Shown: positions 1,181 to 55,449, counted from the stretch's first letter. The stretch: DNA of 58,590 nt from Octopus bimaculoides (GCF_001194135.2 NC_069009.1:1358396-1416985), one strand, 5' to 3'. Notes: generated from the letters alone by a model not told the origin. Numbers and translations are program-made.

Positions 1181-2719
1181 ATGAGTAATTTTATTAAAGA
1201 GATGGCCAAAGGGACAGGAGAATCATTATACCACTGTAAAAAGTCCTATTCTCAAAAAGGAAACATTCCTACTCACAAACGTATTCATACACAGGAGAAA
1301 CCACATCACGGTGAAGCCTATGAGGAATCACTCCCTGCAAATAGTTCCTTAACTAATGACAAAAGACTGAATGCAGGAGAGAAAGCATATCACTGTGATA
1401 TCTGTAGAGAGTCATTCTCTCAAAATATTCACTTAACTGTACACAAACGCATTCATACTGGAGAGAAGCCACATCTTTGTGACATCTGTGGTTTCACTTT
1501 TGCTCAGAAAAACAATTTAATTTTTCACAAACGTACACATACAGGAGAAAAACCACATCGATGTGACATCTGTGGTAAATCGTTCTCTCAGAAAAGCAAC
1601 CTCACGACCCATAAACGCATACATACAGGAGAAAAGCCATATCGTTGTGATATCTGCGGTAAATCATTTTCTCAAAATGTTCAATTGACCAGACATAAAC
1701 ACATTCATACAGATGAAAAAGAACACCAGTGTGATATCTGTGGGAAGTCTTTCTCTCGACTTGGTCACTTAGCTAAACACAGATGTACTCATACAGGAGA
1801 GAAGCCATATCACTGTGATGTCTGTGGTTCACCATTCTCCCAAAAAAGTGAATTGACCGATCACAAACGCATTCATACAGGAGAGAAGCCATATCATTGT
1901 AATATCTGTGGGAAAGCAGTCTCTGTAAGCTGTAATTTGAGTAAACACAGATATATTCATGAGGTAGAGAAACGATATCACTGTGATATTTGTGGTAAAG
2001 CATTTGCCTTAAGCAGTAGGCTAATATCTCACAAGCGTATTCACACAGGAGAAAAGCCATATCATTGTGATATCTGTGGTAAGTCATTCTCTGAAAACGG
2101 CATCTTGACTGTGCACAAACGCATTCATACAGGAGAGAGACCATATCATTGTGATATCTGTGGTAAATCATTCTTACAAAATTATCACTTAACCGTTCAC
2201 AGACGCATTCACACTGGAGAAAAACTATATCGCTGCGATATCTGCGGTAAATCATTCTTCGAAGTGTACACCCTGACTGCTCACAAACGTATTCATACTG
2301 GGGAGAAGCCATATCAGTGTCATATCTGTGGTAAATCATTCTCTCTTCGTGGGGAACTAACTAAACACATACGTACACATACAGGAGAGAAGCCATATCA
2401 TTGTGATATCTGTGGTAAGTCATTCACTGTAAGCAGCCACTTAATTAAGCACAAACGCATTCACACAGGGGAGAAGCCATATCACTGTGATATCTGTGGA
2501 AAGTCATTCAGTGGAAGCAGTGACTTAATTAAGCACAAATACATTCATACAGGAGAGAAGCCATATCAGTGTGATATCTGTGGTAAATCATTCTCTCAGT
2601 CTGGTCACTTGATTACTCACAAACAGATTCACACAGGCAGTCCGCGTTTTCACTGTGACATTTGTGGTAAATCATTGTCTCGAAAGAGTCAGTTGACTAG
2701 ACATGTTTGTAAATGTTGA
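1181..2719 (+). CDS. ZF1: tandem C2H2 zinc-finger protein, 512 aa from first in-frame ATG; 15 C2H2 fingers, a terminal C2HC-type finger and 2 degenerate N-terminal fingers
   Basis: ORF 1163..2719 has repeated CxxC-x12-HxxxH units with TGEKPY linkers; first in-frame ATG at 1181. Confidence 0.93.
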
Positions 2720-2967
2720 CAAAAAAAGTTAACATAAATAAAATAAGCATTTAATTTTGCAATGAAAGTAAACAAACAAAGGTCGTTCTTTTTTAGAAGC
2801 GTTGAGATGTATTCTTGATGCATAATCACAGAGACATGAGTTCGAGTCTCATGGCTGGCCGGTAACATATTTTTCTGCAATGTATGGATAATTTATCCTG
2901 ATCACGCTATTTGTAGCATTATCACACGTTTGAGAAATAAATTTATTTCTGTATCTTACAAGTATTT

Positions 2968-3200
2968 AATTGTTTCAGTCCGTTTAGACTGTGGCCATGC
3001 TGGAGCACCACCTTGAAGAATTCTTACTTGAATGAATCGACACAAGTTCATACCATCTTTTTAAACACTTGTCCTACTGATATCTTTTGCCAAATCACTG
3101 AGTTACAGGGGTATAAACACACCAACACTGGTTTGCAATCAGTGGTGGGAGACAAACACACATACATATACCTGTGTGTGTATGTATATATATATATATA
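2968..3200 (-). mobile_element. SINE family D, degraded 3' part
   Basis: GACTGTGGCCATGCTGGAGCACC tail. Confidence 0.6.
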
Positions 3201-3276
3201 TATATAAAGAAGCACATCATGCATGTATATATATGTAAAGAAGCACATCATGTATATAGATATATATATATATGTG

Positions 3277-3398
3277 TTTATATAAGGGGCATTACTACAG
3301 AATAATGCCACACACTGGACTTCCCAAAATAAACACATTTGTTTATTTTGGGAAGTCCAGTGTGTGGCATTATTCTGTAGTACTGCCCCTTATATAAA
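3277..3398. repeat. Near-perfect 122-bp hairpin: 59-bp arms, 1 mismatch, 4-nt loop
   Basis: 3277-3335 is the reverse complement of 3340-3398. Confidence 0.9.
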
Positions 3399-3868
3399 TA
3401 TAAATGAATAATTATATTCTTGGGAATAGAAACTTCCCTTATGAATTTTTTTACACACTAGCTTCCTGATAAAATTCTTGTAAAAGATTTTTATCCTTTT
3501 TTGAATTTATTAATCATATATATATATATATGTGTATGTATGTATGTAAAGAAGCACATATATATATATATATATAGCGGAAGAGACTTGTCCATGGTGC
3601 CACGCAATGGGACTGAACCCAGAACTGTGTGGTTATAAAGCAAACTTCTTATCACAGAGTCACACTTGTGTGGTAAAATTTGTGAATGATCATCAACAGT
3701 GTTTCTAATAAAACTTCTTTTAATATTTCTGCCATACAAGACATAACTGCATTTTCTCAATGTTTTGTCATGTCGCTTGTGGGACCTAGAATTGTGACAG
3801 GGTTTGGTTCTGAACCCCTTGTTCTTGTTGTATTTTGTTTTTTAATCTGAAATTGAAATAAAGTTAAT

Positions 3869-4066
3869 AAACAAATATTTGTTCTTTTATTGGAAGCATC
3901 GAAAATATGTATTGTACAATACAAATAGGATGATATTTTTTCAAATGCTGAGTTGCCATTAGAACAGCAGAAATACTGGATAAATTAGCCTCACAAGGAA
4001 ACTCAGCATTCAAAAAATATCAACTCCTTATTTCGATGCTTCTAATAATAGAACAAATATTTGTTT
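3869..4066. repeat. Imperfect AT-rich palindrome of about 200 bp, MITE-like
   Basis: AAACAAATATTTGTTCT..GAAGCATCGAAA and GATATTTTTT..AATGCTGAGTT are mirrored. Confidence 0.7.
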
Positions 4067-4749: not shown

Positions 4750-4767
4750 TACCCTTGTAATGAGCCA

Positions 4768-9103: not shown

Positions 9104-10117
9104 ATGAATTGCGAGAACAAGGTTGAATGCTCAGTGCAGTGTAAAAATATTGACATTCCTGATGATGTTGAGAAAGAGGAAGGAAAATCATTGTTATACC
9201 CTTGTGATATCTGTGGTAAATCATTCTCTCAAAAAATAAACTTAACTACGCACAGACGTATTCATACAGGAGAGAAACTACACCACTGTGACATCTGTGG
9301 TAAATCATTCTCTCAGAATATTCACTTAACTAGGCATAAATATGTTCACACTGGAGAGAAACCATATTATTGTGATATCTGTGGTAAATCGTTTTCTCAG
9401 AATGTTCACTTAACCAGTCATAAGCGTATTCATACAGGAGAGAAACCGTATCACTGTGAAATCTGTGATAAATCATTTTCTCAAATAAGTTGCTTAACTA
9501 GACACAAACTCATTCATACGGGGGAAAAACCATTTCATTGTGATGTCTGCAGTAAATCATTCTCTCAAATAAATTATTTAACTCGACATAAGCACATTCA
9601 CACAGGAGAGAAGCCATATCACTGTGATATCTGTGGAAAGTCCTTCTCTCAAATAAATCACTTGAATACACATCAACGCATTCACACAGGTGAGAAACCA
9701 TATTACTGCGATATCTGTGGTAAATCATTCTCTCAAAAAGATAGCATAAATATCCACAAGCGAATTCATACAGGAGAGAAACCCTATCACTGTGATATCT
9801 GTGGCAAATCATTTGCGCAAAGTAGTGATTTAACCAAGCACAAGCGTATTCATACTGGAGAAAAGCCATACCATTGCGATATCTGTGGTAAACCATTCTC
9901 TCAGAAAGATAACCTGAGTACTCACAAACTTATTCATACAGGAGAGAAACCATATCATTGTGATATCTGTGGTAAATCGTTCTCCAAGAAGGTTGTCTTA
10001 GTTACTCACGAACGTATTCATACAGGAGAGAAACCATACCACTGTGATCTTTGTGGTAAATCGTTTTCTCAAAAAAGCAACTTATCTAGACATGTGGATA
10101 TTCACACCAAACAGTAA
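9104..10117 (+). CDS. ZF2: tandem C2H2 zinc-finger protein, 337 aa, 11 fingers
   Basis: ORF 9077..10117; first ATG at 9104; canonical fingers and linkers. Confidence 0.93.
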
Positions 10118-10603: not shown

Positions 10604-10960
10604 ATCATCATCATCGTTTAACGTCCGCTTTCCATGCTAGCATGGGTTGGACGCTTTGACTGAGGACTGGCGAACCAGATGGCTACACCAGGCTCCAATC
10701 TGATTTGGCAGAGTTTCTACAGCTAGATGCCCTTCCTAATGCCAACCACTCAGAGAGTGTAGTAGGTGCTTTTACGTGCCACCAGCACGAAGGCCAGTCA
10801 GGCAGTACTGGCAACGGCCATGCTCAAAATGGTGTATTTTATGTGCCACCAGCACAAGAGCCATTCCGGGGGCACTGGCAACGATCTCGCTCGAAAGTCC
10901 TTACACATGCTGCGGGCACAAGTGCCAGAAAGAGGACGCTGGGCACAGGTGCCATCCCGA
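10604..10960 (-). mobile_element. Retroelement family B (RTE-like 3' end, (GAT)n tail)
   Basis: AGGAAGGGCATC core; CCATGCTAGCATGG; homologous to 14071-14285. Confidence 0.75.
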
Positions 10961-14359: not shown

Positions 14360-15559
14360 ATGCCAAAAGTTAAAGGAAAAACTTCATACCATTGTGGTAT
14401 CTGCAAAAAATCATTTTCTCATAAAGGTAGCTTAACCACACACAAATGTATTCACACAGAAGAGAAGCAATATCACTGCGATTTCTGTGCTCAATCCTTT
14501 TCCAGTAGTAGCACTTTAACTTGTCACAGGCGCACTCATACAGGAGAGAGGCCATATCGTTGTGACATCTGTGGTAAATCATTCTCTCGAAATTATCTTT
14601 TAACTACACACAAACGTATTCATACAGGAGAGAGACCATATCACTGTGATATCTGTGGTAAATCCTTCTCTCAGAATAATCACTTGATTTCGCACAAACG
14701 CAGCCATACTGGAGAGAAACCATTTCACTGTGATATCTGTGATAAATCATTCTCTCGAAATCATCACTTGACTGCACACAAACAGCTTCATACAGGTGAG
14801 AGACCATACCACTGCAATACCTGTGGTAAATCGTTCTCTCGAAGTCACAACCTAACCACACACAAACGCTGTCATACAGGTGAGAAACCATATCATTGTG
14901 ATGTCTGCGGGAAGTCCTTCTCTGAAAGCAGCGTCTTGAATATACACAAACGTATTCATACAAAAGAGAAACCGTATCATTGCGATATCTGTGGTAAATC
15001 ATTCGCTCGACATCATGTCGCAGCCGTACACAAACGTATCCATACAGGCGAGAAACCATATCCATGTAGTATCTGTGGTAAATCCTTTTCGTGTTTGAGC
15101 AGTTTAATCACTCATAAACATATTCACACAGGAGAAAAGCCATATCAGTGTGATATTTGTGGTAAATCGTTCTCTCAGACCTGTTCCTTAACTATCCACA
15201 AACGTATTCACACGGGGGAGAAACCGTATCAGTGTGATATCTGTGGTAAATCATTCTCTTGTGCAGCCACTTTAAATACTCACAAACGCATTCATACAGG
15301 TGAGAAGCCATATCACTGTGATATATGTGGCAAGTCGTTCTCTCACGGAAACAGTTTAACTTATCACAAACATATTCATACTGGAGTGACGCCGTACCTC
15401 TGTAATATCTGTGGAAAATCCTTCTCTAGCACATGCAATTTAAATACTCACAAACGCATTCATACGGGAGAGAAACCATATCAATGTGATATATGTGATA
15501 AATCATTCACTCAAAGTAGTAATTTAATTCAACACAAATGTACTCATACCGAGATATAA
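14360..15559 (+). CDS. ZF3: tandem C2H2 zinc-finger protein, 399 aa, 14 fingers
   Basis: ORF track translation; in-frame TAA at 14333-14335 upstream of the ATG. Confidence 0.92.
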
Positions 15560-18514: not shown

Positions 18515-20038
18515 TTATTCTTCTGTATGGATAAACACATGTGTAGCTAATAGTCTTTTCCGAGAAAATGATTTACCACAGATATCGCAGTGATAAGGCT
18601 TTTCACCTGTATGAATACGAACATGTTCAGTTAAATTACCTTTCTGAGTGAATGCCTTTCCACAGATATCACAGTGATGTGGCCTCTCACCTGTATGAAT
18701 ATATTTGTGTTTGGTTAAATGGTAATTGACAGGAAACGATTTGCCACAGACATCACAATGATATGGTTTCTCTTCTCTATGAATGTGTTTGTGTTTTGTC
18801 AAGTTCCGTTTTAGAGAGAATGCCTTACCACAGATATCACAATGGTGTGGCTTCGTTCCTGTGTGAATCTGTTTGTGTTCTGTTAACTTACACTTTTGAG
18901 AGAATGATTTACCACAGATATCACAGTGATACGGTTTCTCACCTGTATGAATGTGTTTATGCTCAGTTAAATTACCTTTCTGAGAGAATGACTTACTACA
19001 GATATCACACTGATACGGTTTCTCTCCAGTGTGGACACGTTTGTGTTCAGTTAAGTTACCTTTTAGAGAGAACGATTTACCACAGATATCACAGTGATAT
19101 GGTTTCTCTCCCGTATGAATGCGTATGTGTTCAGTTAAGTTGCTACTTCCAGAGAATGATTTGCCACAGACATCGCAGGCATACGTTTTATCTCCTGCAT
19201 GAAGGTGTTTATGTTTGGTTAAGGTACTGCTGGTAGAAAACGGCTTACCACAGATATCACAGTGATATGGCTTCTCGCCTGTATGCATGTGCTTGTGTTC
19301 GCTTAAGTGGTGGCTTCGAGAGAAGGATTTTCCACAGATATCACAGTGATATGGCTTCTCTCCAGTATGATTACGTTGATGTACAGTTAAGTCATGCTTT
19401 CGAGCAAAAGATTTACTACAGGTGTCACAGGGATATGGTTTCTCGCTTGTATGAGTGTGTTTGTGTTCAGCCAAGGTACTTTTCACAGAGAATGATTTAC
19501 CACAGATATCACAGACGTATGGCTTCTCTCCCGTGTGAACACGTATGTGAGTTGTTAAGTTTGTACTTCGACAAAATGACTTACCACAGATGTCACAGTG
19601 GTACGGCTTCTCTCCTGTGTGAATACGTTTGTGTTCAGTTACTTGATGGTTTCGAGAGAACGATTTACCACAGATGTCACAGTGATAAGGCTTCTCTCCA
19701 GTATGAACACGTTTGTGCTTAATTAAATGATCATTTAGAGAGAATGTTTTATCACATACATCACACTGATATGGCTTCTCTCCTGTATAAATATCTTTGT
19801 ACTCAGTCACTGCACTTTCTTCAAGGAAGGATTTCTCGGAGATATCACAGTCATACGATATCTCTCCTGTATGAATAAGTTGGTGTGTAGTAAGTTCACA
19901 TTTTTGAGAGAAGGTATTTTTACAGATATCACACTGGTATAATGCTATTTCTGTGTCTTTCGGCATCTCATTAGAAAAATCAATCCATTCGGTTTGTGTC
20001 TCACACTTAACTGTGCTCTCACACAATTCATTTTCCAT
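18515..20038 (-). CDS. ZF4: tandem C2H2 zinc-finger protein, 507 aa, 16 intact fingers plus 1 degenerate
   Basis: ORF track translation; MENELC leader. Confidence 0.94.
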
Positions 20039-24237: not shown

Positions 24238-25575
24238 TCACAGTGATGTTTTCTCTCTTGTATGAATGAGCTTGTGTCTAGTGAAAGTACCATTCATAGC
24301 AAATGATTTACCACAGATATCACAGTGATATGGTTTCTCACCCGTATGAATACGTTTGTGAGTAGTTAAGTTACCTTTCTGAGCAAACGACTTACCACAG
24401 ATATCACAGTGAAATGGTCTCTCACCTGTATGAATACGTTTGTGTGCAGTTAAGTAATCTTTTTGAGAGAATGATTTACCACAGATATCACAGTGATATG
24501 GTTCCTCACCTGTATGAATGTATTTGTGCTTAATTAAGTCACTGCTTCCACTGTATGACTTACCACAGATATCACAGTGATATGGCTTCTCTCCTGTGTG
24601 AGTGCGTTTGTGCTGAGTTAAGTTACAACTTATACTGAATGACTTTCCACAGATATCACAGTGATATGGCTTCTCCCCTGTATGAACACGTTTGTGTTTT
24701 GCCAAACAACTTCTTCCAGAGAATGATTTACCACAGATATCACAACGATAGGGTTTCTCTCCTGTATGAGTGTCCCTGTGCTGAATTAAATTACTATTCT
24801 GAGAAAATGATTTACCACAGATATCACACTGATATGGTTTCTCACCTGTATGAATACGTTTGTGAGTAGTTAAGTCACTACTTCCAGAGAATGATTTACC
24901 ACAGATATCACAATGGTATGGCTCCTCTCCTGTATGAAGACGTTTATGATGAACTAAACTATTTGTTTGAGAGAATGTTTTACCACAAATGTTACAGTGA
25001 TACGGTTTTTCTCCTGTATGAATGCGCTTGTGAGTAATCAATGTCCAATTAGCAGTGAACGATTTACCACAGATATCACAGTGATAGGGTTTCTCCCCTG
25101 TATGAATGCGTTTATGGGCAGTTAAGTTGTGACTCTCAGAGAATGATTTACCACAGACAGCACAGTGATATGGTGTTTCTCCTGTGTGAATGCGTCTATG
25201 AGTTTTTAAGGTACTGTTTACTGCAAATGACTTACCACAGATATCACAGTGATATGGTTTCTCACCGGTATGAAAGTATTTATGTTTGTTGAAGTTACCC
25301 TTTGTAGCGAATGACTTATCACATATGTCACAGCAGTATGGTTTCTCTCCTGTATGAATACGTTTGTGTTTAATTAAGAGGTTATTTTGAGAGAATGATT
25401 TACCACAGACATCACAGCGATATGGTTTCTCTCCAGTAGAAATGCATTTATGAGTAGTTAGGTTACAGCCTTGAGAAAAAGTCTTTTTGCAGATATCACA
25501 ACAGTATAATTTCTCTCTTTCTTTCGTTATTTCTTCATGAAATAAGCCATCCTTTACATTTTTCACATAACTCAT
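24238..25575 (-). CDS. ZF5: tandem C2H2 zinc-finger protein, 445 aa, 14 intact fingers plus degenerate first finger, ends TSL*
   Basis: ORF 24238..25602; ATG at 25575 matches the paralog start (MSYV). Confidence 0.93.
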
Positions 25576-38132: not shown

Positions 38133-38186
<54 letters not shown>

Positions 38187-39101: not shown

Positions 39102-40007
39102 TTATTCTGTATGATTATATCTGTGTTTGATTAAGTATTCTCTCCGAGCGAATGCTTTACCACAGATATCACAGGGATATGGCTTCTCTCCTGTATGAAC
39201 GGACTTGTGTGTAGTTAGGTTACATGACTGAGAGAATGACATACCACAAACATCACAGTGATAAGGTTTCTCTCCTGTGTGAACGCGTCTGTGAAGAAAT
39301 AAGTTAGTTTTCTGCGAGAATGATTTACCACAGATATCACAACAATATGGCTTCTCTTGTGTATGAATACGTTTGTGATTAGTTAAACTACTTCCTACAG
39401 AGAAAGATTTTCCACAGATTTCACAGTAATATGGCTTCTCACCTGTATGAATACGTTTGTGAGTAATCATGACAGCTTTCTGAGTGAATGATTTACCACA
39501 GATATCACAGCAATGTGGCTTCTCTCCTGTATGAATACGTTTGTGAGTATTCATGGCTCCTTGCTGAGAGAATGCCTGACCACAGATATCACAATGATAT
39601 GGTTTCTCTCCTGTATGAATATAGTTGTGAGTTGTTAGGTTACGTACGCTAGAGAATGATTTGCTACAGATATTACAGGGATAGGGTTTTTCTGCCTTGT
39701 GAATACGCTTGTGAACAAGTAAGTTATTTTTCTGAGAGAATGATTTACCACAGATATCACAGCGATATGGTTTTTCCCCTGTATGAGTACGTATGTGAAT
39801 AGTTAAGGCATTTTGTTGATGAAATGATTTACCACAGAAGCAACAGTGATATGGCTTTTCACTTGTTTGAATATGTTTGTGAACATTGAGATTTGCCCGA
39901 TTATGGTATGATGTTTTACAGATATTACAAGGGTATGACAGTTTTTTTCTTTCTTTTTTCTTCTCTTCAGGACATAAGCCATCCTTTACATTTCTCACAC
40001 AAGTCAT
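39102..40007 (-). CDS. ZF7: tandem C2H2 zinc-finger protein, 301 aa, 9 intact fingers plus degenerate first finger
   Basis: ORF 39102..40127; ATG at 40007 ([11 protein letters not shown]) matches the paralog start. Confidence 0.92.
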   Translation of the reverse strand: MTCVRNVKDGLCPEEKKKERKKLSYPCNICKTSYHNRANLNVHKHIQTSEKPYHCCFCGKSFHQQNALTIHIRTHTGEKPYRCDICGKSFSQKNNLLVHKRIHKAEKPYPCNICSKSFSSVRNLTTHNYIHTGEKPYHCDICGQAFSQQGAMNTHKRIHTGEKPHCCDICGKSFTQKAVMITHKRIHTGEKPYYCEICGKSFSVGSSLTNHKRIHTQEKPYCCDICGKSFSQKTNLFLHRRVHTGEKPYHCDVCGMSFSQSCNLTTHKSVHTGEKPYPCDICGKAFARREYLIKHRYNHTE

Positions 40008-41594
40008 TGTTCTATATTTCTTATACAACCACAAATTATATGATATGTAAACAAACCTAAGTTTATTTTTGAAGCACTGAAATGTATTGTAGTGCAAGTA
40101 GAAAAGTTTTTTTTTTTTTTTTTTCAATGCATAAGCACTGATAAAATCCTACAGGGCAGAAAAATCTATCAGCAACCAGCCATGAGATTTTATCCTATAT
40201 ATGCTGTTCTATACCTACAAACGTGTTGAAAAAATATATCTTTCTACTTATACTACAAATTATGTATTTCTTGTTTTCTCTTTTTACATATTTCTACATT
40301 TTTTTCAAATACTTCTGCAAGTCCGATATTCGTCAATATTTGAAGATGATTACAAACACCATTGCAGATTTTTTCCAAGTCCAAACAGGAGCTTTTGCAA
40401 ATACTCAAAGTAATGAGGAAAACAAATGTTGCTATTAATTCAGAAGAAGTATTTCAGCTATTCACCAAAAATATATTATATAAACAGAGTTATATTTATC
40501 ATTTATAACATCTTCCTCTTGTGTTCAAAAGATGATCAATATTCATAATGTATCTGGAGTAAAAACATTTTTATACCATTGACATCTGATATTCTGAAAT
40601 GATACAGAAACATTAGAAGATATAGGGAATACGTTAAAAGCGGAGATTCAACAATAAAGGTATTACATTTTTATGATGATAAACTATGGATACAAACTTT
40701 TATATTATACAACCTTGTGTAAGGTCTACATATACAAGACTTCGACTCATCTGCTTTCAGATATTAGGAAAATATTAAACAACAAAATATTGGACCATAA
40801 CGTTGTACTTGTGGGAGAAGTCGTTGTTTAGTCCAAGGTCATACCGGAGTGAGCAGACCTATTAATGAAATTAGGTTGTGTTCACGACTGTTACGACATG
40901 CATAACAGGTCAAACATAAACATAACTATACTTCGGTCACCAATCCAATACACTTTTCCTCTTGTAACTTTCGTAATAATACATATATATCTTTTAAAGA
41001 AATATTGCAGCCACACGTTCACAAATACGTTTTTAAATTTTATTTTTTTCCCCAGTTCTTTTGCAATTTGCTGAGTCTGTGTAGTCAAATCTATCTTGTA
41101 TAATAGCGGTGTCATGAGTCACCTGTCTTAGTCGGATATTTGTGTTTCATGATGTTGTAGATAACTATTTATTCTCAGGAGCTTAAAGTGTACATAACTA
41201 TTAAGGTGAATCCTTTTGACAAAATAAACAGCAAATAAAGATATGTAGCAGATGATAAAACAATAGACGGCTTTGAGTGGACACAATCAACAAATAGATT
41301 ATCTACTGTAATAAAAGAATAGGAGGTAAAGAATACGTACACCACCCATTAAAACGTAACAAAAATGCTAACCCTAATCCTATCCCTAACTTTAAACACC
41401 CAGTACACGTATTTTTTACTTTCGTCATAGGAGAAATTTAAAATTCAGTGCTTTTTCATGGTCATGCCAAATCAAATCCAGATCTTGGCATAAGTTACGA
41501 AGTTTATATGAGAATAGAACATCGATCTCAGACTAGCAGCAGTTGGCCTGGTTCTTCAGCTTTTATTAAAAATAAAATATGTGTTATATCTTAC

Positions 41595-41944: not shown

Positions 41945-42377
41945 TCTTTTACTTGTTTCAGTCATTTGACTGCAGTCATGCTGGAGCACCGCCTNNNNNN
42001 NNNNNNNNNNNNNNNNNNNNNNNNNNNNNNNNNNNNNNNNNNNNNNNNNNNNNNNNNNNNNNNNNNNNNNNNNNNNNNNNNNNNNNNNNNNNNNNNNNNN
42101 NNNNNNNNNNNNNNNNNNNNNNNNNNNNNNNNNNNNNNNNNNNNNNNNNNNNNNNNNNNNNNNNNNNNNNNNNNNNNNNNNNNNNNNNNNNNNNNNNNNN
42201 NNNNNNNNNNNNNNNNNNNNNNNNNNNNNNNNNNNNNNNNNNNNNNNNNNNNNNNNNNNNNNNNNNNNNNNNNNNNNNNNNNNNNNNNNNNNNNNNNNNN
42301 NNNNNNNNNNNNNNNNNNNNNNNNNNNNNNNNNNNNNNNNNNNNNNNNNNNNNNNNNNNNNNNNNNNNNNNNNNNNN

Positions 42378-42415
<38 letters not shown>

Positions 42416-42572
42416 TGCACGACAGGCTTCTTCAGTTTCTGTCTGCCAAATCCACTCACAAGGCTTTGGTCGGCCCGAGGCTATAGTAGAAGACACTTGC
42501 CCAAGGTGCCACGCAGTGGGAATGAACCCGGAACCATGTGGCTGGTAAGCAAGGTATTTACCACATAGCCAT
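41945..42572 (-). mobile_element. SINE family D spanning an assembly gap
   Basis: Tail before the gap and head after it. Confidence 0.75.
41995..42377. other. Assembly gap (N run)
   Basis: Direct. Confidence 1.
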
Positions 42573-43101
42573 TCCTAAACCACCGTTGGTTTATTTACAT
42601 TCCTTCTGTGTCTAGCGAAAGAGTCGGTCATGTAACTACCAGACAATTGTGGCTCGTAGATAAAATTAGTGGGGATGCTGCTTCAGAAAATTTCTGGCCA
42701 TTGTTTTAATATTGTGTAAAATGTTCTTCTTTTCTCTTTCCCTCCTTCATATTCCTCATCAATTAATGTCAATTTTGGTATGGTCACCACAGCTGGATGC
42801 CCTTCCTAGCTCTAACAACTTTATAGTGTGTACTGGGTACTTATTTCTTGCTACCAGCACTTGTGGGGGGGTTGCCAAGTAACTTGTAGGACACAAAAGA
42901 ATAAGAAAATGGGAAAGCTATCTTCACTAAGTGGGGAGAGAGTATTTTAGAAGTGATTTTATGTCAGGGAGAGGTGTTTCACTATGGAGAAGATACATTG
43001 GTTGCCTCACATTTATTATAAGGGTGGGTGAGAGTTTCTGAGGGTAAAAATATGATGTTAGTGACGGGATGCAAAAGCAAGACCCTCGACAACGTGCTGT
43101 A

Positions 43102-43508: not shown

Positions 43509-44343
43509 GTAAGATATAATACATATTTTATTTTTCGTAAAAGTAGGTGAACCTGGCTAATTGGAAACTCCAGAGTCAGTGATCGGTATTAATTCCGTTC
43601 TGAGTTAGAGCGATTTTACGTCTTGAAAATCCTTTTCAGATACCAAACCGTGTTCCAAGGGGTAGAATAAAGATTATTTCCAACAACTTCCGTAGGTACT
43701 TTTAAATCGGTTAATTTTATTATTATTATTTTATAATTACGCAAGTTATTTGATCGAAACCAAAAGAATGAATGGTAAAGGCGACTTCCGTAGAATTTGA
43801 ACTCACAACGGACGAAATGCCATTAAGCGATTTGTTCGGAGTGCTAGCAAATCTGCCAACTCGCTACCTTATTGATTGTTATTATAATAATTACCAATAA
43901 GGGTATGAAAAGTTTGTTTCACACACACACACACACACACACACATATTTATAGTTTGCATTTAACGTTTATAAATATATTTCCTTTTGGGCATACTTCG
44001 GTGAATGGGAAAATGAGTTTTGGAAAACAACATTCACTAATCATGTTTCTGAAGATAGAACAATGTTATTGTCTACTGTTCTATAGTTTAACATGTTACA
44101 TAATATATGGAGGTGGAGGCACTGAAGTCTGTGTATATGTAGACATTACACAAGGTTATATGATATAATATCAATAACAAAATAAATAATAAAGACTATT
44201 TTTTCAGATAAAAGTCGATCTACACAGTTTATCATTATAACAATGTAATAATATTTTTATAGTATTTCCTATATCTTCTATTGTTTCTGTATCATTTCAG
44301 AATATCAGACATCTGTGGCATAAAGGAATTTTTACTTCAGATA

Positions 44344-44489
44344 CATCATCATCATCATTGTTTAACGTCCGCTTTCCATGCTAGCATGAGTTGGACGATT
44401 TGACTGAGGACTGGTGAACCAGGTGGCTACACCAGGCTCCAATTTGATTTGGCAGAGTTTCTACAGCTGGATGCTTTTCCTAATGCCAA
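44344..44489 (-). mobile_element. Retroelement family B 3' portion between the ZF8 acceptor and ATG
   Basis: As for the 10604 copy. Confidence 0.8.
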
Positions 44490-44795
44490 TTGATTATGTT
44501 TCAACACAAAAGGAAAATGTTATAGATATAAAATATAATCCTGTTTATATAATATATCTATGGTGAATAACTGTGAGATATCTGTTCTGAATTAATAGCA
44601 ACATTTGTTTTCCTCATTGCCTGGAATATATTTACTGAAGTATTTCACATTTTTATTAATATTGGACACATCTGTTTGTATCGTCTTCAGATGTTAATGA
44701 GGATCAGAGTTGATGGGAATATAGCAATAAATCGACATAGAAAAGAAAACAAGAAAAATATATTTTGTGCTGGTATAAGAAAATATCATAGAACA

Positions 44796-45953
44796 ATGAG
44801 TCACGTGAGAAATGTAAAGGATGGCTTATTTCCTGAAGGGATGACAAAAGAAAAAGAAAAATCATTATACCACTGTGAGACCTGTAAAAAGTATTTTCCA
44901 AATAAGGAAAACCTCACAATTCACAAATGTATTCATACAGGTGAGAAGCGATATCACTGTGAAATCTGTGGTAAATCATTCTCTCACAACAGTAGCCTTA
45001 ATTATCATAAACACATTCACACAGGAGAGAAACCACATCGCTGCGATATTTGTGGTAAGCTATTCTCCAAAAAGCGTATCTTAACTCAACATAAATACAT
45101 TCATACAGGAGAGAAGCCATATCACTGTGATATCTGTGGTAAATCATTCTCTCAAAACAGTAGCCTTACTTCTCACAAATATATTCACACAGGAGAGAAA
45201 CCATATCACTGTGAGGTCTGTGGTAAATCATTTGCTTTAAAGGGTAACTTAACTGCACACAAATCCATTCATTCAGGAGAGAAGCCATATCCCTGTGATG
45301 TCTGTGGTAAATCATTCTCTCTAAAAGGTAACCTCATTACACATAACAATATTCATACAGGAGAGAAACCACATCATTGTGATATCTGTGGTAAATCATT
45401 CTCTCAAATTAGCACCTTAATTTCTCATAAATCCAGTCACACAGGAGAGAAACGATATAACTGTGATATCTGTGATAAGTCATTCTCCCAGAGAGGTGCC
45501 TTAACTGCTCACAAGTATATTCATACAGGAGAATGGCCGTATCACTGTGATGTCTGTGGTAAATCATTTCCTGAAAAGGGTAACTTAATTAAACATAAAT
45601 ACATTCACACAGGAGCGAAACCATATCATTGTGATATCTGTGGGAAATTATTCACTCAAATAAGTGCCATAACTACTCATAAACGTATTCACACAGGAGA
45701 ACAGCCCTATCACTGCGATATCTGTGGCAAATCATTCTCTGTAAAAAGTGTTTTGACTAATCACAAACGTACCCATACAGGAGAGAAACCATATCGCTGT
45801 GATATCTGTGATAAATCATTCTCTGTGAGAAGTAATTTAGCTAATCACAAGCGCACTCATACAGGAGAGAAACCATATCACTGTGATGTCTGTAATAAAT
45901 CATTTTCTCGGAGGAATCACTTGACTAAACACAAACATATTCATACAGGATGA
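44796..45953 (+). CDS. ZF8: tandem C2H2 zinc-finger protein, 385 aa, 13 fingers
   Basis: ORF 44676..45953; ATG at 44796 matches the paralog start; in-frame ATGs at 44691 and 44697 could extend the N-terminus. Confidence 0.92.
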
Positions 45954-49132: not shown

Positions 49133-49142
49133 AGATGAAGTA

Positions 49143-49858: not shown

Positions 49859-51763
49859 CTATCCTGCATGAATGCATTTGTGCTTAGTCAAGAGACTACT
49901 TCTGAAGAATGATTTACCACAGATATCACAATGGTATTGTTCCTCTCCTGTATGAAGACGTTCATGATAATTTAAACTATTTATCTGAGAGAATGTTTTA
50001 CCACAAATATTACAGTGATATGGTTTTTCTCCTGTATGAATACGCTTGTGAGTAGTTAAGTGACTATTTTCAGAGAAAGACTTACCACAGTTATCACAAT
50101 GATATGGTTTCTCACCTGAGTGAATACGTTTGTGTTTAGCTAAATTACTTTTTCCAGAGAATGATTTACCACAGATATCACAATGGTATGGCTCCTCTCC
50201 TGTATGAATGCGTTGATGATGAATTAAACTATTCATCTGAATGAATGTTTTACCACAAATATTACAGAGATAGGGTTTTTCTCCTGTATGAATACGCTTG
50301 TGAGCTATCAGGGTACCACTAGCAGTGAATGATTTACGACAGATATCACACTGATATGGTTTCTCTCCTGTATGAATGCGTTTGTGAGTATTCAAGTGTA
50401 AACTCTTAGAGAATGATTTACCGCAGACAGCACAATGATATGGTGCTTCCCCCGTGTGATTGTATTTATGAGTTGTTAAGGAACTATTTACTGCAAATGA
50501 CTTACCACAGATATCACAGTGATATGGTCTCTCACCTGTATGAATACGCTTGTGAGAAGTTAAGTGGCATTTTTCAGAGAATGACTTATCACAGGTATCA
50601 CAGTGATATGGTTTCTCACCTGTGTGAATACGTATGTGTTTAGCTAAATCAGTTTTTCCAGGGAACGATTTACCACAGATATCGCAATGGTATGGTTCCT
50701 CCCCTGTATGAAGACGTTTATGATAAATTAAACTATTCCTATAAGAGAATGTTTTACCACAAATATCACAGTGATACGGTTTTTCTCCAGTATGAATGCT
50801 CTTGTGAGTAATCAAGGTACCACTAGCAGAGAACGATGCGCCACAGACATCACAGTGGTATGGTTTCTCACCTGTATGAGAGTATCTATGTGTAGTTAAG
50901 TTACTCTTTACAGCGAATGACTTACCACATATATCACAACTGTATGGTTTTTCTCCTGTGTGAATGCGTTTATGAGTTTTTAAAGTACTATTCACTGTAA
51001 ATGACTTACCACAGATATCACAGTGATGTGGCTTCTCACCTGTATGTATACGTCTGTGAGCTTTCAAGTTATCAGTTACAGAAAATGATTTACCACAGAT
51101 ATCACAGTCATATGGTTTCTCACCTGTATGAGAGTAATTATGTCTAATTAACTTACCCTTTACAGCGAATGACTCCCCACATATATCACAACAGTATGGT
51201 TTTTCACCTGTGTGAATGCGTTTATGATTTATTAAGACCCAAATTCCTGCAAATGACTTGCTACATATATCACAATGATGGAGTTTCTCTCCTGTGTGAA
51301 CACGTTCATGTTGAATCAAATTACTTTTCTGAGAGAATGTTTTACCACAAATATCACAGTGATAAGGCTTTTCTCCAGTATGAACACGCTTGTGAGCAAT
51401 CAAGGGACCATTAGTAGTGAACGATCTACCACAGATATCACATTGATATAGTTTCTCACCTGTATGAATACGTTTATGTGTAGTTAAATTTCCTTTTTGA
51501 GAGAATGATTTGCCACAGGTATCACACTGATATGGTTTCTCACCTGCATGAGAGTATTTATGTTTAGTTAGGTTACCCTTTACAGCGAATGACTCGCCAC
51601 AGATATCACAGCGATATGGTTTCTCTCGAGTAGAAATGCATTGATGAGTAGTTAGGTTACCTCTCTGAGAGAAAGACGTTTTGCAGATATCACATTGATA
51701 TAATTTTTCTTTTTCTTTTGTCATCTCTTCAGGAAAAAAGCCATCCTTTCTCACATAACTCAT
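49859..51763 (-). CDS. ZF9: tandem C2H2 zinc-finger protein, 634 aa, 21 intact fingers plus degenerate first finger
   Basis: ORF track translation. Confidence 0.94.
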
Positions 51764-52480
51764 TGTTCTATAATGTTTCTGATAACACCATAATAAATAT
51801 ATATTTTTCTTGTGTTTCTTTTTATATATATGTTTCTATTGACTTCAGTATCTGAAGGTTACAAATTTCCTTGTAAATGTATCCATGTTTAATTCGAATA
51901 TTCCAGACAGTGAGGAGGAGAAATATCGCTGTTCAGAACAAAGTATTTCACAGTTATTCATCATAGATATATTATATAAACATGTTTATATCTATTATTC
52001 ACAACATCTTCCTTTCGTCTTTAAAGGATTATTGACATTCATGATGTATCTCAAGTAGAAATCCATTCATGCCACACACGTCTGATGTTCTGAAATGATA
52101 TCAAACAGAAAATAGTTAAAAAGGAGAGATTCAATAATAGAAATGCTAGTATATTTCTATAAGGATAGACTGTGGATATAAATTTTTGCCTAAAAAGTTA
52201 CTTTCTATTTTGTTATTAAAATTATATTCTACAACCTTGGGTATATCTTCTGGATGCACTCGTCCAATTTTACCCGTATACGTAGACAAACATCGCAGTT
52301 ACAAAGCGGATGGTATCACAGAGATACGTGCGATATTCGGCTAAGTCAACAAATTAATTATCCTTTTATGTGACTATTATAATCAATTAAACTGAATTAA
52401 TTACGGTATATTTCATACACATGAAAATAGCAAGGCATTCAGAGATTTGAACTTTACCGAAATGAATATTAATATCTTAC

Positions 52481-53201: not shown

Positions 53202-53387
53202 GCTACATTCGGGCAAGACAGATATAAATGATTTTAAAATTACGATGAGGATCGTACTCAAAAATTTAATTTAAATTAATTTTTGTAATTAATTTATTTG
53301 ATTTCTCGAGTTACACCCGGAAGTATAGTACGTTATTAACTCACAGTAATTTAAAAATTATTTATATTTGTCTTGCCCGAATACAGC
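53202..53387. repeat. Inverted repeat with arms of about 40 bp, MITE-like
   Basis: ATTCGGGCAAGACA.ATATAAAT mirrored. Confidence 0.6.
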
Positions 53388-53641
53388 TGAATTTCAAATC
53401 TAGGAAATATATAGAAGCTTAATGGAAACATTTATTTTTCAACGTTAGGAGACAGATAGTATCTATCTTCCTCCCTTCTCTTTATATATATATATACACA
53501 CACACATATATAGACAATTGTATTTTGCCGCCAGGCTTACGCATGTTGAAATTCATTAAGGAAGTCTGTTTTCTTATCCTCGTGTTTTGATATATACATA
53601 TAATATACAAGAAACACATTAAAATTTCAAACAAATTTATT

Positions 53642-54097
53642 TTAATACGGTGTAGGACTGCCTTTGGCAGTAATTACAACTTGAATTCTATGAGCTATTG
53701 ATTTTTACAAAGATTAAATTGTTTCCAAAGGAATTTTTGTCCATACTTCAGCTAAAACAGTCTCCAGTTCTGGTAGTGATGATGTTGGAGGATATTGACT
53801 CCTTACTTGTTTTTCTAAAATGCACCATAAATGTTCAATAATACTGAGATCTGGGTGGTGTGGTGGCCAGATATGATGTTCAACTTCACTAGAGTGTTCT
53901 TCGTGTCATTCAGCAACAACTTTAGCTGTGTGAATTGGTGCATTAGCATCCTGAAGGATGATTGTCTTTCCCTCTGGAAAGATTTCCGCAACCATAAGAT
54001 GAATCTGATCAGATAAAATGCTTAAATAGTCTTGACTATTAACTCTGCCATGAAGGGAAACCATTGGGCCGGCAGATTTCCAAGATATAGTCCCCAC
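53642..54097 (-). mobile_element. Tc1/mariner transposase C-terminal fragment (pseudogenised)
   Basis: ILQDANAPIH...WPPHHPDLSIIEHLW...VITAKGSPTPY*, resembling the Tc1 QDNAPxH and WPxxSPDLNPIE motifs. Confidence 0.85.
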
Positions 54098-54104
54098 CCC
54101 AGAT

Positions 54105-54369
54105 CATCTGTACTGGAGAATACCTGCCCACCACAACGAATTGAGGTCCTGATACCAAGGTGTTATGTAAAAAGCACTCGTGATGGGGCTGTGTCTGAAT
54201 CACCCAGTACACTCTGTACAGTGGTTGGCATTAGGAAAGTTATCCAGGCATAGAAACCAAGCCAAAACAGACTATGGAACCTGGTGCATCCCCTAACCTC
54301 GTCAGTTCCTGCCAAGCCATACAACCCATTGAAAACAGACGTTAAATGTTGATGATGAAAATGATAATG
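54105..54369 (+). mobile_element. Retroelement family C at the ZF10 3' end, 5' part missing next to the Tc1 fragment
   Basis: Homology to 49210-49476. Confidence 0.75.
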
Positions 54370-55449
54370 TCACAATGAGGTTTCCTCTCCATTATGAATG
54401 AGTTTGTGTTTAGTCAAAGTGCCATTCACAGCAAACGATTTACCACAAATATCACAGTGATATGGTTTCTCACCTGTATGTATGTATTTGTGCTTAGTTA
54501 AGAGACTACTTCTAGAGAACGATTTACCACAGACATCACAGTGATATGGCTTCTCTCCCGTGTGAATGTGTTTGTGCATAGTCAAGATACTACTTCTAGA
54601 GAATGACTCGCCACATATATCACAGCAATATGGCTTCTCTCCTGTGTGAATACGTTTGTGATTTACCAAATTATTTCTGCTAGACAATGATTTACCACAT
54701 ATATCACAATGATGGAGTTTATCTCCTGTGTGAAGATATTTATGATGGATTAAATTACTTGTCTGAGAGAATTTTTTACCACATATATCACAGTGATACG
54801 GTTTTTCTCCAGTATGAATGCGCCTGTGAGCAATCAAGAGACCATTAGTAGTGAACGATTTACCACAGATCTCACAGTGATATGGCTTATCACCTGTATG
54901 AATACGTGTGTGTGTAGTTAAACTACATTTCTGAGAGAATGACTTACCACAGATATCACAGTGATATGGTTTCTCGCCTGTGTGAGAGTATCTATGTGTG
55001 ATTAAGCTACTCCTTACAGTGAATGACTTATCACATATATCACAGCAGTATGGTTTTTCTCCTGTGTGGATGCGTTTATGAGCTATTAAGACACTAATTA
55101 CTGCAAATGATTTCCCACAGATATCACAGTGATGTGGTTTCTCACCTGTATGAATGTGTTTGTGAGTAGTTAAGATACTTTTTTGAGAGAATGACTTACC
55201 ACAGATATCACAGTGATATGGTTTCTCACCTGTATGAGAGTAATTATGTCTAATTAAATTACTCTTTACTGTAAATGACTCGCCACATATATCACAGCGA
55301 TATGGTTTCTCTCGAGTAGAAATGCATTTATGAGTAGTTATGTTATCTCTCTGAGAGAAAGACGTTTTGCAGATATCACAATGATATAATTTTTCTCTTT
55401 CTTTTGTCATCTCTTCAGGAAATAAGCCATCCTTTCTCACATAACTCAT
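54370..55449 (-). CDS. ZF10: tandem C2H2 zinc-finger protein, 359 aa, 11 intact fingers plus degenerate first finger, ends TSL*
   Basis: ORF track translation. Confidence 0.94.
   Translation of the reverse strand: MSYVRKDGLFPEEMTKEREKLYHCDICKTSFSQRDNITTHKCISTREKPYRCDICGESFTVKSNLIRHNYSHTGEKPYHCDICGKSFSQKSILTTHKHIHTGEKPHHCDICGKSFAVISVLIAHKRIHTGEKPYCCDICDKSFTVRSSLITHRYSHTGEKPYHCDICGKSFSQKCSLTTHTRIHTGDKPYHCEICGKSFTTNGLLIAHRRIHTGEKPYHCDICGKKFSQTSNLIHHKYLHTGDKLHHCDICGKSLSSRNNLVNHKRIHTGEKPYCCDICGESFSRSSILTMHKHIHTGEKPYHCDVCGKSFSRSSLLTKHKYIHTGEKPYHCDICGKSFAVNGTLTKHKLIHNGEETSL

What the first reader, a model, noticed from the sequence alone, without database searches (positions are those of the whole stretch)
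1181..55449. Ten-gene array of finger-only C2H2 genes with no recognisable effector domain, interleaved with transposons
Seen: ten open ORFs with 9-21 intact fingers each, strongly differing recognition helices, only about 10-40 aa of non-finger leader, and at least seven TE classes between them. Known: coleoid cephalopods have a large clustered C2H2 expansion, and vertebrate KRAB-ZNF clusters with this layout repress TEs through KRAB/TRIM28. Inference: this may be a convergent TE-recognition or neural regulatory repertoire that works without a KRAB-like domain; how it recruits effectors is unexplained.
Basis: partly seen in the sequence, partly recalled or inferred. Interest (0 to 1): 0.7.

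Follow-up and report, generated by a model that had tools for sequence, protein, structure and literature searches.

The report
Octopus-type zinc-finger gene array
Ten intact, fast-diversifying zinc-finger DNA-binding genes sit in a much larger tandem array of a kind already known from octopus genomes; they are not quite "finger-only", because each has a short shared N-terminal leader and many share a conserved upstream control block.

Summary
The ten ORFs are real. Each is an intact single-exon poly-C2H2 gene with 9-21 fingers and an 11-35 aa leader. All five N-gaps are intergenic, and four lie in (TA)n tracts. Pfam finds only finger families, and KRAB is essentially absent from the whole 2.34-Gb genome. 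The window is the middle of an array of at least 38 genes spanning at least 230 kb. Framework codons are strongly constrained (omega 0.15-0.18). DNA-contact codons evolve near neutrality (0.79-0.95), so these are working, diversifying genes.

Two parts of the finding do not hold as written:
- "At least seven TE classes" is not substantiated. I can show three SINE or SINE-like families and one weak Tc1/mariner remnant, and SINE density is no higher inside the array than beside it.
- The genes are not leaderless. All share a Glu/Lys-rich N-terminal leader. Its long form marks at least 143 ZNF genes on seven or more chromosomes, against 0 hits for a shuffled control.

A 250-nt non-coding upstream module travels with many of the genes. 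The leader is predicted disordered and is only weakly constrained (omega about 0.55).

Clustered, effector-less C2H2 expansions in octopus, and the TE arms-race idea, are already published. TE targeting and effector recruitment remain untested.

The parts
1181..2719 (+). ZNF gene 1: 16 intact fingers; the first finger has lost its Cys pair; short leader [18 protein letters not shown]
9104..10117 (+). ZNF gene 2: 11 fingers; long-type leader [33 protein letters not shown]
14360..15559 (+). ZNF gene 3: 14 fingers; shortest leader ([11 protein letters not shown])
18515..20038 (-). ZNF gene 4: 16 fingers; 35-aa long-type leader [35 protein letters not shown]; second finger degenerate
24238..25575 (-). 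ZNF gene 5: 14 fingers plus a first finger lacking its last His; leader [24 protein letters not shown]
29766..31484 (-). ZNF gene 6: 19 fingers plus a degenerate first finger; short leader [15 protein letters not shown]
39102..40007 (-). ZNF gene 7: 9 fingers plus a degenerate first finger; leader [25 protein letters not shown]
44796..45953 (+). ZNF gene 8: 13 fingers; leader [25 protein letters not shown]
49859..51763 (-). ZNF gene 9: 21 fingers; leader [22 protein letters not shown]
54370..55449 (-). ZNF gene 10: 11 fingers; leader [22 protein letters not shown]
51897..52239 (-). Conserved non-coding upstream module of gene 9 (putative promoter/5'UTR). It holds the blocks TTTCTATATCATTTCAGAAT and ATATATCTATGGTGAATAAC
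25764..26107 (-). Upstream module of gene 5 (88% identical to gene 9's)
55554..55926 (-). Upstream module of gene 10, partly duplicated in tandem (132 bp x 1.9 at 55501-55757)
40439..40701 (-). Upstream module of gene 7
44151..44629 (+). Upstream module of gene 8, split by a ~150-bp SINE-like insertion that the paralogs lack
31647..31905 (-). Upstream module of gene 6
57378..57754 (-). Example copy of the FAM3 tRNA-derived SINE (~380 bp, A and B boxes, (CAA)n tail). There are 10 copies in the window, e.g. 4392-4752, 12336-12716, 33468-33836
41956..42576 (+). FAM1 tRNA-derived SINE with an internal (TA)n tract. This copy contains assembly gap 41995-42377. Other copies include 37976-38390 and 48181-48550
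10604..10830 (+). Example copy of the FAM2 SINE-like retroposon (~230 bp, (CAT)n/(ATG)n end). Other copies are at 14072-14285 and 37572-37790
53717..54103 (-). Tc1/mariner-type transposase remnant: two ORF pieces, Pfam DDE_3 E=1e-4, below the curated cut-off

Best explanation
The window is the central 58 kb of a tandem array spanning at least 230 kb and holding at least 38 genes. The genes belong to a lineage-specific poly-C2H2 zinc-finger family in a genome that fits an octopus assembly.

Shown:
- Each gene is one coding exon: ATG, a short Glu/Lys-rich leader, an often degenerate first finger, 9-24 canonical fingers joined by TGEKP-type linkers, then a stop.
- Paralog homology extends beyond the ORFs into both flanks, so duplicated units include flanking DNA. 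In the MSYV/MNPQ-leader genes the unit includes a conserved ~250-nt non-coding upstream module. Units occur in both orientations.
- Finger arrays are remodelled by gain, loss and block duplication of 84-bp units.
- Zinc ligands, the hydrophobic core and the linkers are under strong purifying selection. The DNA-contact residues (-1, +2, +3, +6) change at about the neutral rate, so almost every finger has a different specificity.

Inferred:
- The proteins are sequence-specific DNA binders acting as transcriptional regulators.
- With no KRAB, SCAN, BTB or ZAD domain, any partner recruitment would go through the disordered acidic leader, the ligand-poor first finger, or both.
- Whether their targets are transposons, as in KRAB-ZNF and FiNZ-ZNF systems, or host genes in neural and embryonic tissue is not decided by this evidence.
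For: - Intact ORFs containing only finger domains.
- Array extent and leader types across C29:1,278,601-1,508,425.
- ATG context: purine at -3 in 33 of 35 genes. Two genes have an in-frame TGA one codon upstream with no AG in between, so no upstream coding exon can join in frame there.
- The upstream module is conserved (blocks 80-92% identical in 19 genes). It is non-coding, with early stops in all frames and no 3-nt periodicity (65:63:59, P=0.86).
- The same module lies 170-500 bp upstream of long-leader genes on C9, C21 and C28 (one search compared).
- Selection from 11 independent paralog pairs: framework omega 0.15 (CI 0.13-0.18), linker 0.24, contact 0.79 (0.62-1.01), Fisher P=1.6e-34.
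- Selection from 32 reciprocal-best finger pairs: framework 0.18, contact 0.95 (0.56-1.95), P=2e-4.
- Finger block duplication and non-collinear arrays. Units share flanks at 91-99% identity.
- No KRAB in the genes, and one marginal hit in the genome, on another chromosome.
- AlphaFold gives fingers pLDDT 76-92 and leader residues 1-29 below 50.
- Published context: octopus C2H2 clusters (PMC9068888, PMC9795677), expression associated with nervous tissues (PMC12513265), and predicted motif enrichment in TEs (PMC10547256).
Against: - There are no expression, binding or interaction data for these genes, so DNA binding and regulation are inferred from family membership.
- Contact-site omega is about 1, not above 1. 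That fits relaxed constraint as well as diversifying selection, and pairwise counting cannot separate the two.
- The leader is only weakly constrained (omega 0.55-0.58, CI reaching 1.0) and is predicted disordered. It may be a spacer rather than an effector motif.
- Flanks are more similar than the arrays in two pairs. That could reflect gene conversion of the flanks rather than fast array evolution.
- An upstream coding exon further than ~620 nt away, or hidden in a gap, is not excluded for most genes.
- No tool named the organism.
Confidence: 0.75

Rival explanations
1. Convergent TE-silencing system. The proteins recognise young transposons, such as the SINE families that fill this genome, and recruit a repressor through the conserved acidic N-terminal leader. 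The leader would play the role of KRAB in tetrapods or FiNZ in cyprinid fish.
For: - The architecture and selection pattern parallel KRAB-ZNF and FiNZ-ZNF clusters.
- The leader is short, N-terminal and Glu-rich like FiNZ (PMC10547256).
- Its long form marks at least 143 ZNF genes in about 13 clusters, against 0 hits for a shuffled control.
- SINE copies are about 92% identical to consensus, a divergence of the same order as dS between the youngest paralogs (0.12-0.3).
- Wells 2023 predicted that octopus ZNF motifs are enriched in TE consensus sequences.
Against: - There are no binding or knock-down data.
- Leader omega is about 0.55, and the leader is predicted disordered.
- The leader could not be found in other species with the tools available.
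- TE density is not elevated in the array.
- Published expression is associated with nervous tissues, not a zygotic-activation pattern (PMC12513265).
Confidence: 0.25
2. Host-gene regulatory repertoire. The paralogs are ordinary transcription factors that have sub- or neo-functionalised into different neural and developmental expression modules. Their targets are host regulatory DNA, not transposons.
For: - Holzinger 2025 (PMC12513265) reports that expanded cephalopod C2H2 genes keep nervous-system expression and split into different co-expression modules.
- Each gene here carries its own conserved upstream module.
- Strong framework constraint shows the genes are maintained.
Against: - Near-neutral turnover of contact residues and rapid finger gain and loss fit poorly with conserved host targets.
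- None of these ten genes can be tied to the published expression data from here.
Confidence: 0.3
3. An unseen upstream exon supplies an effector domain, so the genes only look finger-only in genomic ORFs.
For: - A conserved T-rich tract followed by AG lies 4-14 nt before most ATGs, so a 5' intron is plausible.
- For most genes an AG lies between the last in-frame stop and the ATG.
- Gaps lie upstream of some genes.
Against: - The ATG is conserved in all 35 assessable genes, with a purine at -3 in 33.
- Two genes cannot accept an in-frame upstream exon.
- The only conserved upstream sequence is non-coding.
- No effector-type domain (KRAB, SCAN, BTB, ZAD) turned up in about 10,500 aa of spacer ORFs.
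- KRAB is absent from this chromosome.
Confidence: 0.08
4. Mostly drifting copies. Tandem duplication outruns selection, and individual genes have little or no function.
For: - Contact-site omega is about 1 and leader omega about 0.55.
- At least one broken copy lies in the flank.
- There is an orphan finger fragment at 49061-49138.
Against: - All ten window genes are intact over 1.0-2.0 kb.
- Framework omega of 0.15-0.18 with tight confidence intervals shows sustained purifying selection on zinc ligands, core and linkers.
Confidence: 0.1

Closest known systems
Octopus / coleoid lineage-specific C2H2 ZNF expansions (Albertin 2015; Albertin 2022, PMC9068888; Jiang 2022, PMC9795677; Holzinger 2025, PMC12513265)
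   Same: - Hundreds to thousands of multi-finger C2H2 genes sit in tandem clusters on a few chromosomes.
- The genome statistics here (2.34 Gb, 30 large contigs plus about 145,000 small ones, gap-rich) fit a Hi-C-scaffolded octopus draft.
   Different: - The papers I could read describe counts, phylogeny, dating and expression.
- None mentions a shared N-terminal leader, a degenerate first finger, or a conserved upstream non-coding module.
- The species was not confirmed here.
Tetrapod KRAB-ZNF clusters (KRAB/TRIM28 TE repression)
   Same: - Tandem clusters, with the finger array in one exon and TGEKP linkers.
- Finger gain and loss, a constrained framework and fast contact residues.
   Different: - No KRAB box in the genes, and essentially none in the genome.
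- The N-terminus is a 11-35 aa disordered leader in the same exon as the fingers.
- Repression, TRIM28-like partners and TE targets are untested.
Cyprinid FiNZ-ZNFs (Wells 2023, PMC10547256)
   Same: - A short N-terminal, Glu-rich sequence with no match to known domains marks a large lineage-specific ZNF family.
- Clustered genes, with diversifying fingers.
   Different: - A different phylum, and no sequence relationship was tested or expected.
- FiNZ-ZNFs have knock-down evidence for TE repression and positive-selection tests. This family has neither.
- The leader here is weakly constrained (omega about 0.55).
Effector-less C2H2 proteins that use fingers for protein contacts (e.g. Drosophila IMZF-type dimerising fingers, PMC12774644)
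   Same: There is no dedicated effector domain, and an atypical N-terminal finger sits ahead of the main array's canonical fingers. The first finger has lost a ligand in 6 of 10 genes.
   Different: - No CGxPhi motif or extra beta-strands were seen.
- AlphaFold models the degenerate finger as an ordinary beta-beta-alpha unit.
- Dimerisation was not tested.

Membership tests
KRAB-ZNF (KZFP) | N-terminal KRAB A box (Pfam PF01352) | tested here: not met
   hmmscan of all ten proteins finds no KRAB. No KRAB in about 10,500 aa of spacer ORFs. A whole-genome six-frame search gives one marginal hit (21.3 bits, E=0.63) on C8 and none on C29.
KRAB-ZNF (KZFP) | Tandem C2H2 array with TGEKP-type linkers in a single exon, with genes in tandem clusters | tested here: met
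   There are 9-21 fingers per uninterrupted ORF, with consensus [28 protein letters not shown]. At least 38 genes lie within 230 kb.
KRAB-ZNF (KZFP) | Recruits TRIM28/KAP1 and silences transposons | not testable with these tools
   This needs interaction, ChIP and knock-down experiments.
Coleoid cephalopod C2H2 expansion | Encoded in a coleoid cephalopod genome | tested here: inconclusive
   No tool named the organism, and exact proteins are absent or withheld from public collections. The genome statistics (2.34 Gb, contigs C1-C30 large, 145,327 contigs) fit octopus N=30 and the Hi-C-scaffolded O. bimaculoides draft described in PMC9068888. This is an inference.
Coleoid cephalopod C2H2 expansion | Many multi-finger C2H2 paralogs in chromosomal clusters produced by lineage-specific duplication | tested here: met
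   The array holds at least 38 genes. Leader-bearing relatives form about 13 clusters on C21, C28, C29, C30, C9, C10 and C7. dS between the nearest paralogs is 0.12-0.3.
Coleoid cephalopod C2H2 expansion | Expression enriched in nervous or embryonic tissue | not testable with these tools
   No transcript data are reachable. It is reported for the family in PMC12513265.
FiNZ-ZNF-like (ZNF family marked by a short N-terminal non-domain motif) | A short conserved N-terminal sequence shared by a large ZNF subfamily, with no match to known domains | tested here: met
   Two long-leader queries give 129 matches (E<=10) and 98 matches (E<=1), merging to 172 loci, of which 143 start open frames of 250 aa or more. 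A shuffled control gives 0 matches. No Pfam family covers the leader. This is an analogy only; cyprinid FiNZ itself is taxon-restricted.
FiNZ-ZNF-like (ZNF family marked by a short N-terminal non-domain motif) | The motif is under purifying selection and has effector (repressor) activity | tested here: inconclusive
   Leader omega is 0.58 (CI 0.36-1.02) over 217 codons and 0.55 among the six long leaders. The 35-aa length is kept without indels in five of those six; gene 2's leader is 33 aa. The leader is predicted disordered. Activity is not testable.
ZAD-, SCAN- or BTB-ZNF | N-terminal ZAD (PF07776), SCAN (PF02023) or BTB (PF00651) domain | tested here: not met
   None appears in the ten proteins or in the spacer ORFs of the window.

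The most novel reading that the evidence does not exclude
The Glu/Lys-rich N-terminal leader, possibly together with the ligand-poor first finger, is a cephalopod-specific effector-recruiting motif that does the job of KRAB or FiNZ. The conserved ~250-nt upstream module gives the whole subfamily a common expression programme. This would be a third, independently evolved ZNF-based genome-surveillance system, and it could be tested with leader fusions and promoter reporters.
Probability: 0.2. Interest if true: 0.75.

Novelty: new member of a known kind. Interest (0 to 1): 0.38.

Why it matters
Clustered poly-ZNF expansions have arisen repeatedly in animals. An effector mechanism has been worked out for the tetrapod KRAB-ZNFs (KRAB/TRIM28), and knock-down evidence for TE repression exists for the cyprinid FiNZ family. 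For the roughly 1,800 octopus C2H2 genes, the papers I could read describe no effector domain, and one of them states the TE arms race as an open question.

This array adds nothing new as a cluster. It does supply concrete, testable handles:
- a defined leader sequence that marks at least 143 genes;
- a first finger that has lost a zinc ligand in six of the ten window genes;
- a defined non-coding module that accompanies the genes across chromosomes.

If either the leader or the module proves functional, it would show how a KRAB-less lineage wires a large ZNF repertoire. If not, the array is one more example of birth-and-death evolution.

Tried and rejected
1. Whole-protein homology search with gene 10 was swamped by vertebrate poly-ZNFs and gave no organism information.
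2. Searches seeded only from the leader region found no candidate sharing words. Gene 10 residues 1-40 and gene 4 residues 1-40 were both tried, so the leader could not be traced to other species.
3. Exhaustive HMMER with gene 4's N-terminal 92 aa failed. Scores sum over all fingers, giant ZNFs dominate, and almost all best stretches start at or near residue 34, the start of the finger, so it says nothing about the leader.
4. Exact-sequence look-ups of all ten proteins found none on record or they are withheld.
6. Genome copy number of the FAM3 SINE returned 0 hits although the window holds about 10 copies. The tool skips very common words, so this is uninformative.
7. Rfam and ARAGORN found no tRNA or other RNA. 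The SINE heads were recognised from A and B boxes in the alignments instead.
8. Single-linkage clustering of repeats chained everything together and was replaced by depth-delimited seeds.
9. LINE and Helitron calls were made by eye only (RT-like ORF at 7040-7450, CCxxGKV-type ORF at 23129-23446). Pfam finds nothing there, apart from Exo_endo_phos_2 at E=0.04 at 33858-34238, so they are not claimed.
10. The hidden coding exon in the conserved upstream block is rejected.
11. The first dN/dS run used global alignments that mis-registered some fingers. It was repeated on reciprocal-best finger pairs and reached the same conclusion.

Full report
OBSERVATION

Under the standard code the window holds ten long open frames, each made almost entirely of C2H2 fingers. 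The 84-bp finger period is also picked up by Tandem Repeats Finder. A strict C-x2-C-x12-H-x3-4-H/C pattern counts 16, 11, 14, 16, 14, 19, 9, 13, 21 and 11 fingers. From the first plausible Met to the first finger is 11-35 aa. The finding's end coordinates, 1181 and 55449, are the start codons of the first and last genes.

All ten proteins match only C2H2-type Pfam families. No KRAB, SCAN, BTB or ZAD domain is present.

The five N runs (8078-8469, 16505-16871, 27383-28127, 41995-42377, 46961-47233) all lie between genes. Four are bounded by (TA)n on at least one side. Gap 41995-42377 sits inside one SINE copy, with the left half of the element before the gap and the (TA)n tract plus right half after it. 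Reading-frame continuity across gaps is therefore not an issue for any ORF.

WIDER CONTEXT

The window is C29:1,358,396-1,416,985 of a 2.34-Gb assembly with 145,327 contigs. I fetched 80 kb upstream and 120 kb downstream. That region holds at least 38 poly-ZNF ORFs, from the first base fetched to C29:1,508,425, followed by 28 kb without any. The ten genes are thus the middle of a larger array whose left edge was not reached.

No tool named the organism. Thirty large contigs, many small ones and frequent gaps fit octopus (N = 30) and the Hi-C-scaffolded short-read draft of O. bimaculoides described in PMC9068888. That paper also reports about 1,800 C2H2 genes in octopus. This assignment is an inference.

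ARE THE GENES ALIVE, AND DO THE HELICES REALLY DIFFER?

Over the 136 canonical fingers in the window, helix positions -1, +1, +2, +3 and +6 carry 2.7-3.4 bits of entropy. Most framework positions carry 1.1 bits or less. There are 129 distinct -1/2/3/6 quadruplets.

Nei-Gojobori counts on 11 phylogenetically independent paralog pairs give these omega values:
- framework: 0.15 (bootstrap CI 0.13-0.18)
- linkers: 0.24
- helix +1/+5: 0.51
- contact codons: 0.79 (0.62-1.01)
- contact versus framework: Fisher P = 1.6e-34

Finger-by-finger matching then showed that global alignments mis-register some fingers. One gene carries an internal three-finger block duplication, and the arrays of genes 9 and 10 are not collinear. 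I repeated the test on 32 reciprocal-best finger pairs. Framework omega was 0.18 (0.10-0.30) and contact omega 0.95 (0.56-1.95), with P = 2e-4.

So the scaffold is firmly conserved while specificity residues turn over at about the neutral rate. It does not prove positive selection.

NOT QUITE FINGER-ONLY

All 34 assessable leaders in the 258-kb region share a core directly before the first finger, roughly hydrophobic-Pro-acidic-acidic-Met/Val-x-Lys-Glu-x-x-Lys-x-x-Tyr-x-Cys. They fall into a few N-terminal types.

The [24 protein letters not shown] type of genes 5 and 7-10 is local. It has about 13 copies, all within C29:1.38-1.51 Mb.

The 35-aa type of gene 4 (MENELCE...IDF.NEMPKD...) is genome-wide:
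- It gave 129 matches at E <= 10, with 150 of 167 candidates scored. Nearly all align end to end and sit at the start of open frames of 300-1,100 aa.
- A composition-matched shuffle gave 0 matches.
- A second variant gave 98 matches at E <= 1.
- Merged, these are 172 loci. Of them, 143 sit in open frames of 250 aa or more, in about 13 clusters on C21, C28, C29, C30, C9, C10 and C7. This is a lower bound because both searches hit the scoring cap.

Leader properties:
- It is Glu/Lys-rich (E 15%, K 12%), and the long form is net acidic.
- AlphaFold gives its first 29 residues pLDDT below 50 with no secondary structure, while the fingers score 76-92. The alignment was shallow, at ten sequences.
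- Constraint is weak. Omega is 0.58 (CI 0.36-1.02) over 217 codons and 0.55 among the six long leaders. Five of those six keep the 35-aa length without indels; gene 2's leader is 33 aa.

The first finger is also unusual. In six of the ten genes it has lost a zinc ligand, and in gene 4 the second finger has.

IS THERE A HIDDEN EFFECTOR EXON?

- The ATG is conserved in all 35 assessable genes, with a purine at -3 in 33. A T-rich tract ending in AG lies a few bases upstream, so a 5'UTR intron is plausible.
- In two genes an in-frame TGA lies one codon before the ATG with no AG in between. No upstream coding exon can be joined in frame there.
- Genes with the MSYV and MNPQ leaders share a conserved module at about -450 to -200. 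Its blocks are 80-92% identical over 19 genes, for example TTTCTATATCATTTCAGAAT.
- Because that block looks like a splice acceptor, I tested coding potential. Most genes hit stops within 1-19 codons in all three frames, no frame is open across genes, and substitutions show no three-base periodicity (65:63:59, P = 0.86). The module is non-coding.
- It is not private to this array. Of 43 genomic matches, about 24 lie next to genes of the array. At least five others lie 170-500 bp upstream, on the same strand, of long-leader genes on C9, C21 and C28 (one search compared).
- KRAB is essentially absent from the genome, with one 21-bit match on C8.
- Spacer ORFs in the window carry no effector-type domain (KRAB, SCAN, BTB, ZAD).

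An exon further upstream or inside a gap cannot be excluded without transcripts.

THE SPACERS

62% of the non-ZNF, non-gap bases recur elsewhere in the 258-kb region. Part of that is the duplicated gene flanks. Three high-copy families dominate:
- FAM3: a ~380-bp tRNA-derived SINE with clear A and B boxes and a (CAA)n tail.
- FAM1: a second tRNA-derived SINE with an internal (TA)n tract, which explains the gaps.
- FAM2: a ~230-bp SINE-like element with an (ATG)n end.

The only TE protein signal is a weak DDE_3 match at 53717-54103. LINE-like and Helitron-like ORFs seen by eye are not supported by Pfam. "At least seven TE classes" is therefore not substantiated.

SINE copies are about 92% identical to consensus. 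Their density in the array (FAM3 38, FAM1 about 39, FAM2 17 bp per kb) is no higher than in the neighbouring ZNF-free 28 kb (32, about 96, 63). Interleaving with repeats is genomic background and does not argue for a TE-related function.

HOW THE ARRAY GROWS

Paralogs share flanking DNA as well as the ORF. In the C29:1.486-1.498 Mb trio, homology runs over about 2.4-2.5 kb at 85-87%. One pair has patches at 91-99%. Orientation varies (+ + + - - - - + - - in the window). Gene 8's module is split by a SINE-like insertion that the paralogs lack, so insertion continued after duplication.

In two pairs the flanks are clearly more similar than the finger arrays: 93-95% against 73-79% for genes 9 and 10. 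Either the arrays are remodelled faster than the surrounding DNA, or the flanks have been homogenised by conversion. I could not decide between these.

COMPARISON WITH WHAT IS KNOWN

Clustered C2H2 expansions in octopus and squid are well documented (PMC9068888, PMC9795677, PMC12513265). The last of these papers calls a TE arms race an open question. Wells et al. (PMC10547256) predicted that octopus ZNF motifs are enriched in TE consensus sequences. They also described FiNZ, a 28-aa Glu-rich N-terminal sequence that marks about 700 zebrafish ZNFs with knock-down evidence for TE repression.

The present array works like a KRAB-ZNF or FiNZ-ZNF cluster in layout and evolutionary dynamics. It fails the defining KRAB test, and it has no functional data. 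In the papers I could search, I found no description of the leader, the degenerate first finger or the upstream module. That is absence from a limited library, not proof of novelty.

VERDICT

This is a real, functional and rapidly diversifying ZNF gene array of an already known kind. The TE-class count is not substantiated, and "finger-only" overlooks a family-wide leader. The useful additions are concrete handles for testing effector recruitment and co-regulation: the leader, finger 1 and the upstream module.

Noticed in passing
window 49859-52239 vs 54370-55926; C29:1343000-1355500 (L025/L026): The flanks of paralog pairs are more similar than their finger arrays. Genes 9 and 10 have a 5' module 93% and a 3' flank 95.5% identical, against arrays at 73-79% that are not collinear. 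The pair C29:1346065/1351925 has upstream sequence 91-99% identical against ORFs at 84-86%. Either the arrays are remodelled fast or the flanks have undergone gene conversion; this is undecided.
   Followed up: partly
C29:1346065-1347354 (L026): One gene carries an internal duplication of a three-finger (252-bp) block. Its fingers 3-5 and 6-8 both match fingers 3-5 of its sister gene.
   Followed up: yes
window 55501-55757: A 132-bp unit repeated 1.9 times at 98% identity duplicates part of gene 10's conserved upstream module.
   Followed up: partly
window ~44350-44498: A truncated SINE-like (FAM2) element is inserted inside gene 8's upstream module and is absent from all paralogs. It is therefore a post-duplication insertion into a putative promoter.
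   Followed up: partly
window 8078-8469, 27383-28127, 41995-42377, 46961-47233: Four of the five assembly gaps fall in (TA)n tracts. At least two abut copies of the FAM1 SINE, which carries an internal (TA)n microsatellite. This is a likely systematic cause of gaps in this assembly.
   Followed up: yes
window 49061-49138 (-): An orphan single-finger fragment ([22 protein letters not shown]) lies about 0.7 kb 3' of gene 9, inside a segment that recurs downstream of genes 2, 5 and 10. It may be the relic of an array truncated by a SINE insertion and then copied along with the unit.
   Followed up: no
C29:1460830-1462957 (L017, about 3845-5972): Two abutting ZNF ORFs on the same strand (204 and 500 aa) look like one gene broken by a stop or frameshift. 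This is the only clearly disrupted copy seen in the 258 kb.
   Followed up: no
window 18515-20038, 24238-25575, 29766-31484, 39102-40007, 49859-51763, 54370-55449, 1181-2719: The first finger is atypical in every gene (C-K-K/T-S/T-F ... H-K-C-I-H/S) and has lost a zinc ligand in six of ten genes. Gene 4 instead has a degenerate second finger, which AlphaFold still models as beta-beta-alpha.
   Followed up: partly
G000 small contigs (e.g. C79612, C96652, C14927, C26326): Several leader matches lie on tiny unplaced contigs. ZNF clusters are probably under-assembled, so gene counts are lower bounds.
   Followed up: no
window 7040-7450 (-), 23129-23446 (+), 33858-34238 (+): Three ORF fragments resemble, by eye, a LINE reverse-transcriptase N-terminus, a Helitron N-terminal region and a LINE endonuclease. 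Pfam gives nothing for the first two and E=0.04 for the endonuclease. They are left unclassified.
   Followed up: partly
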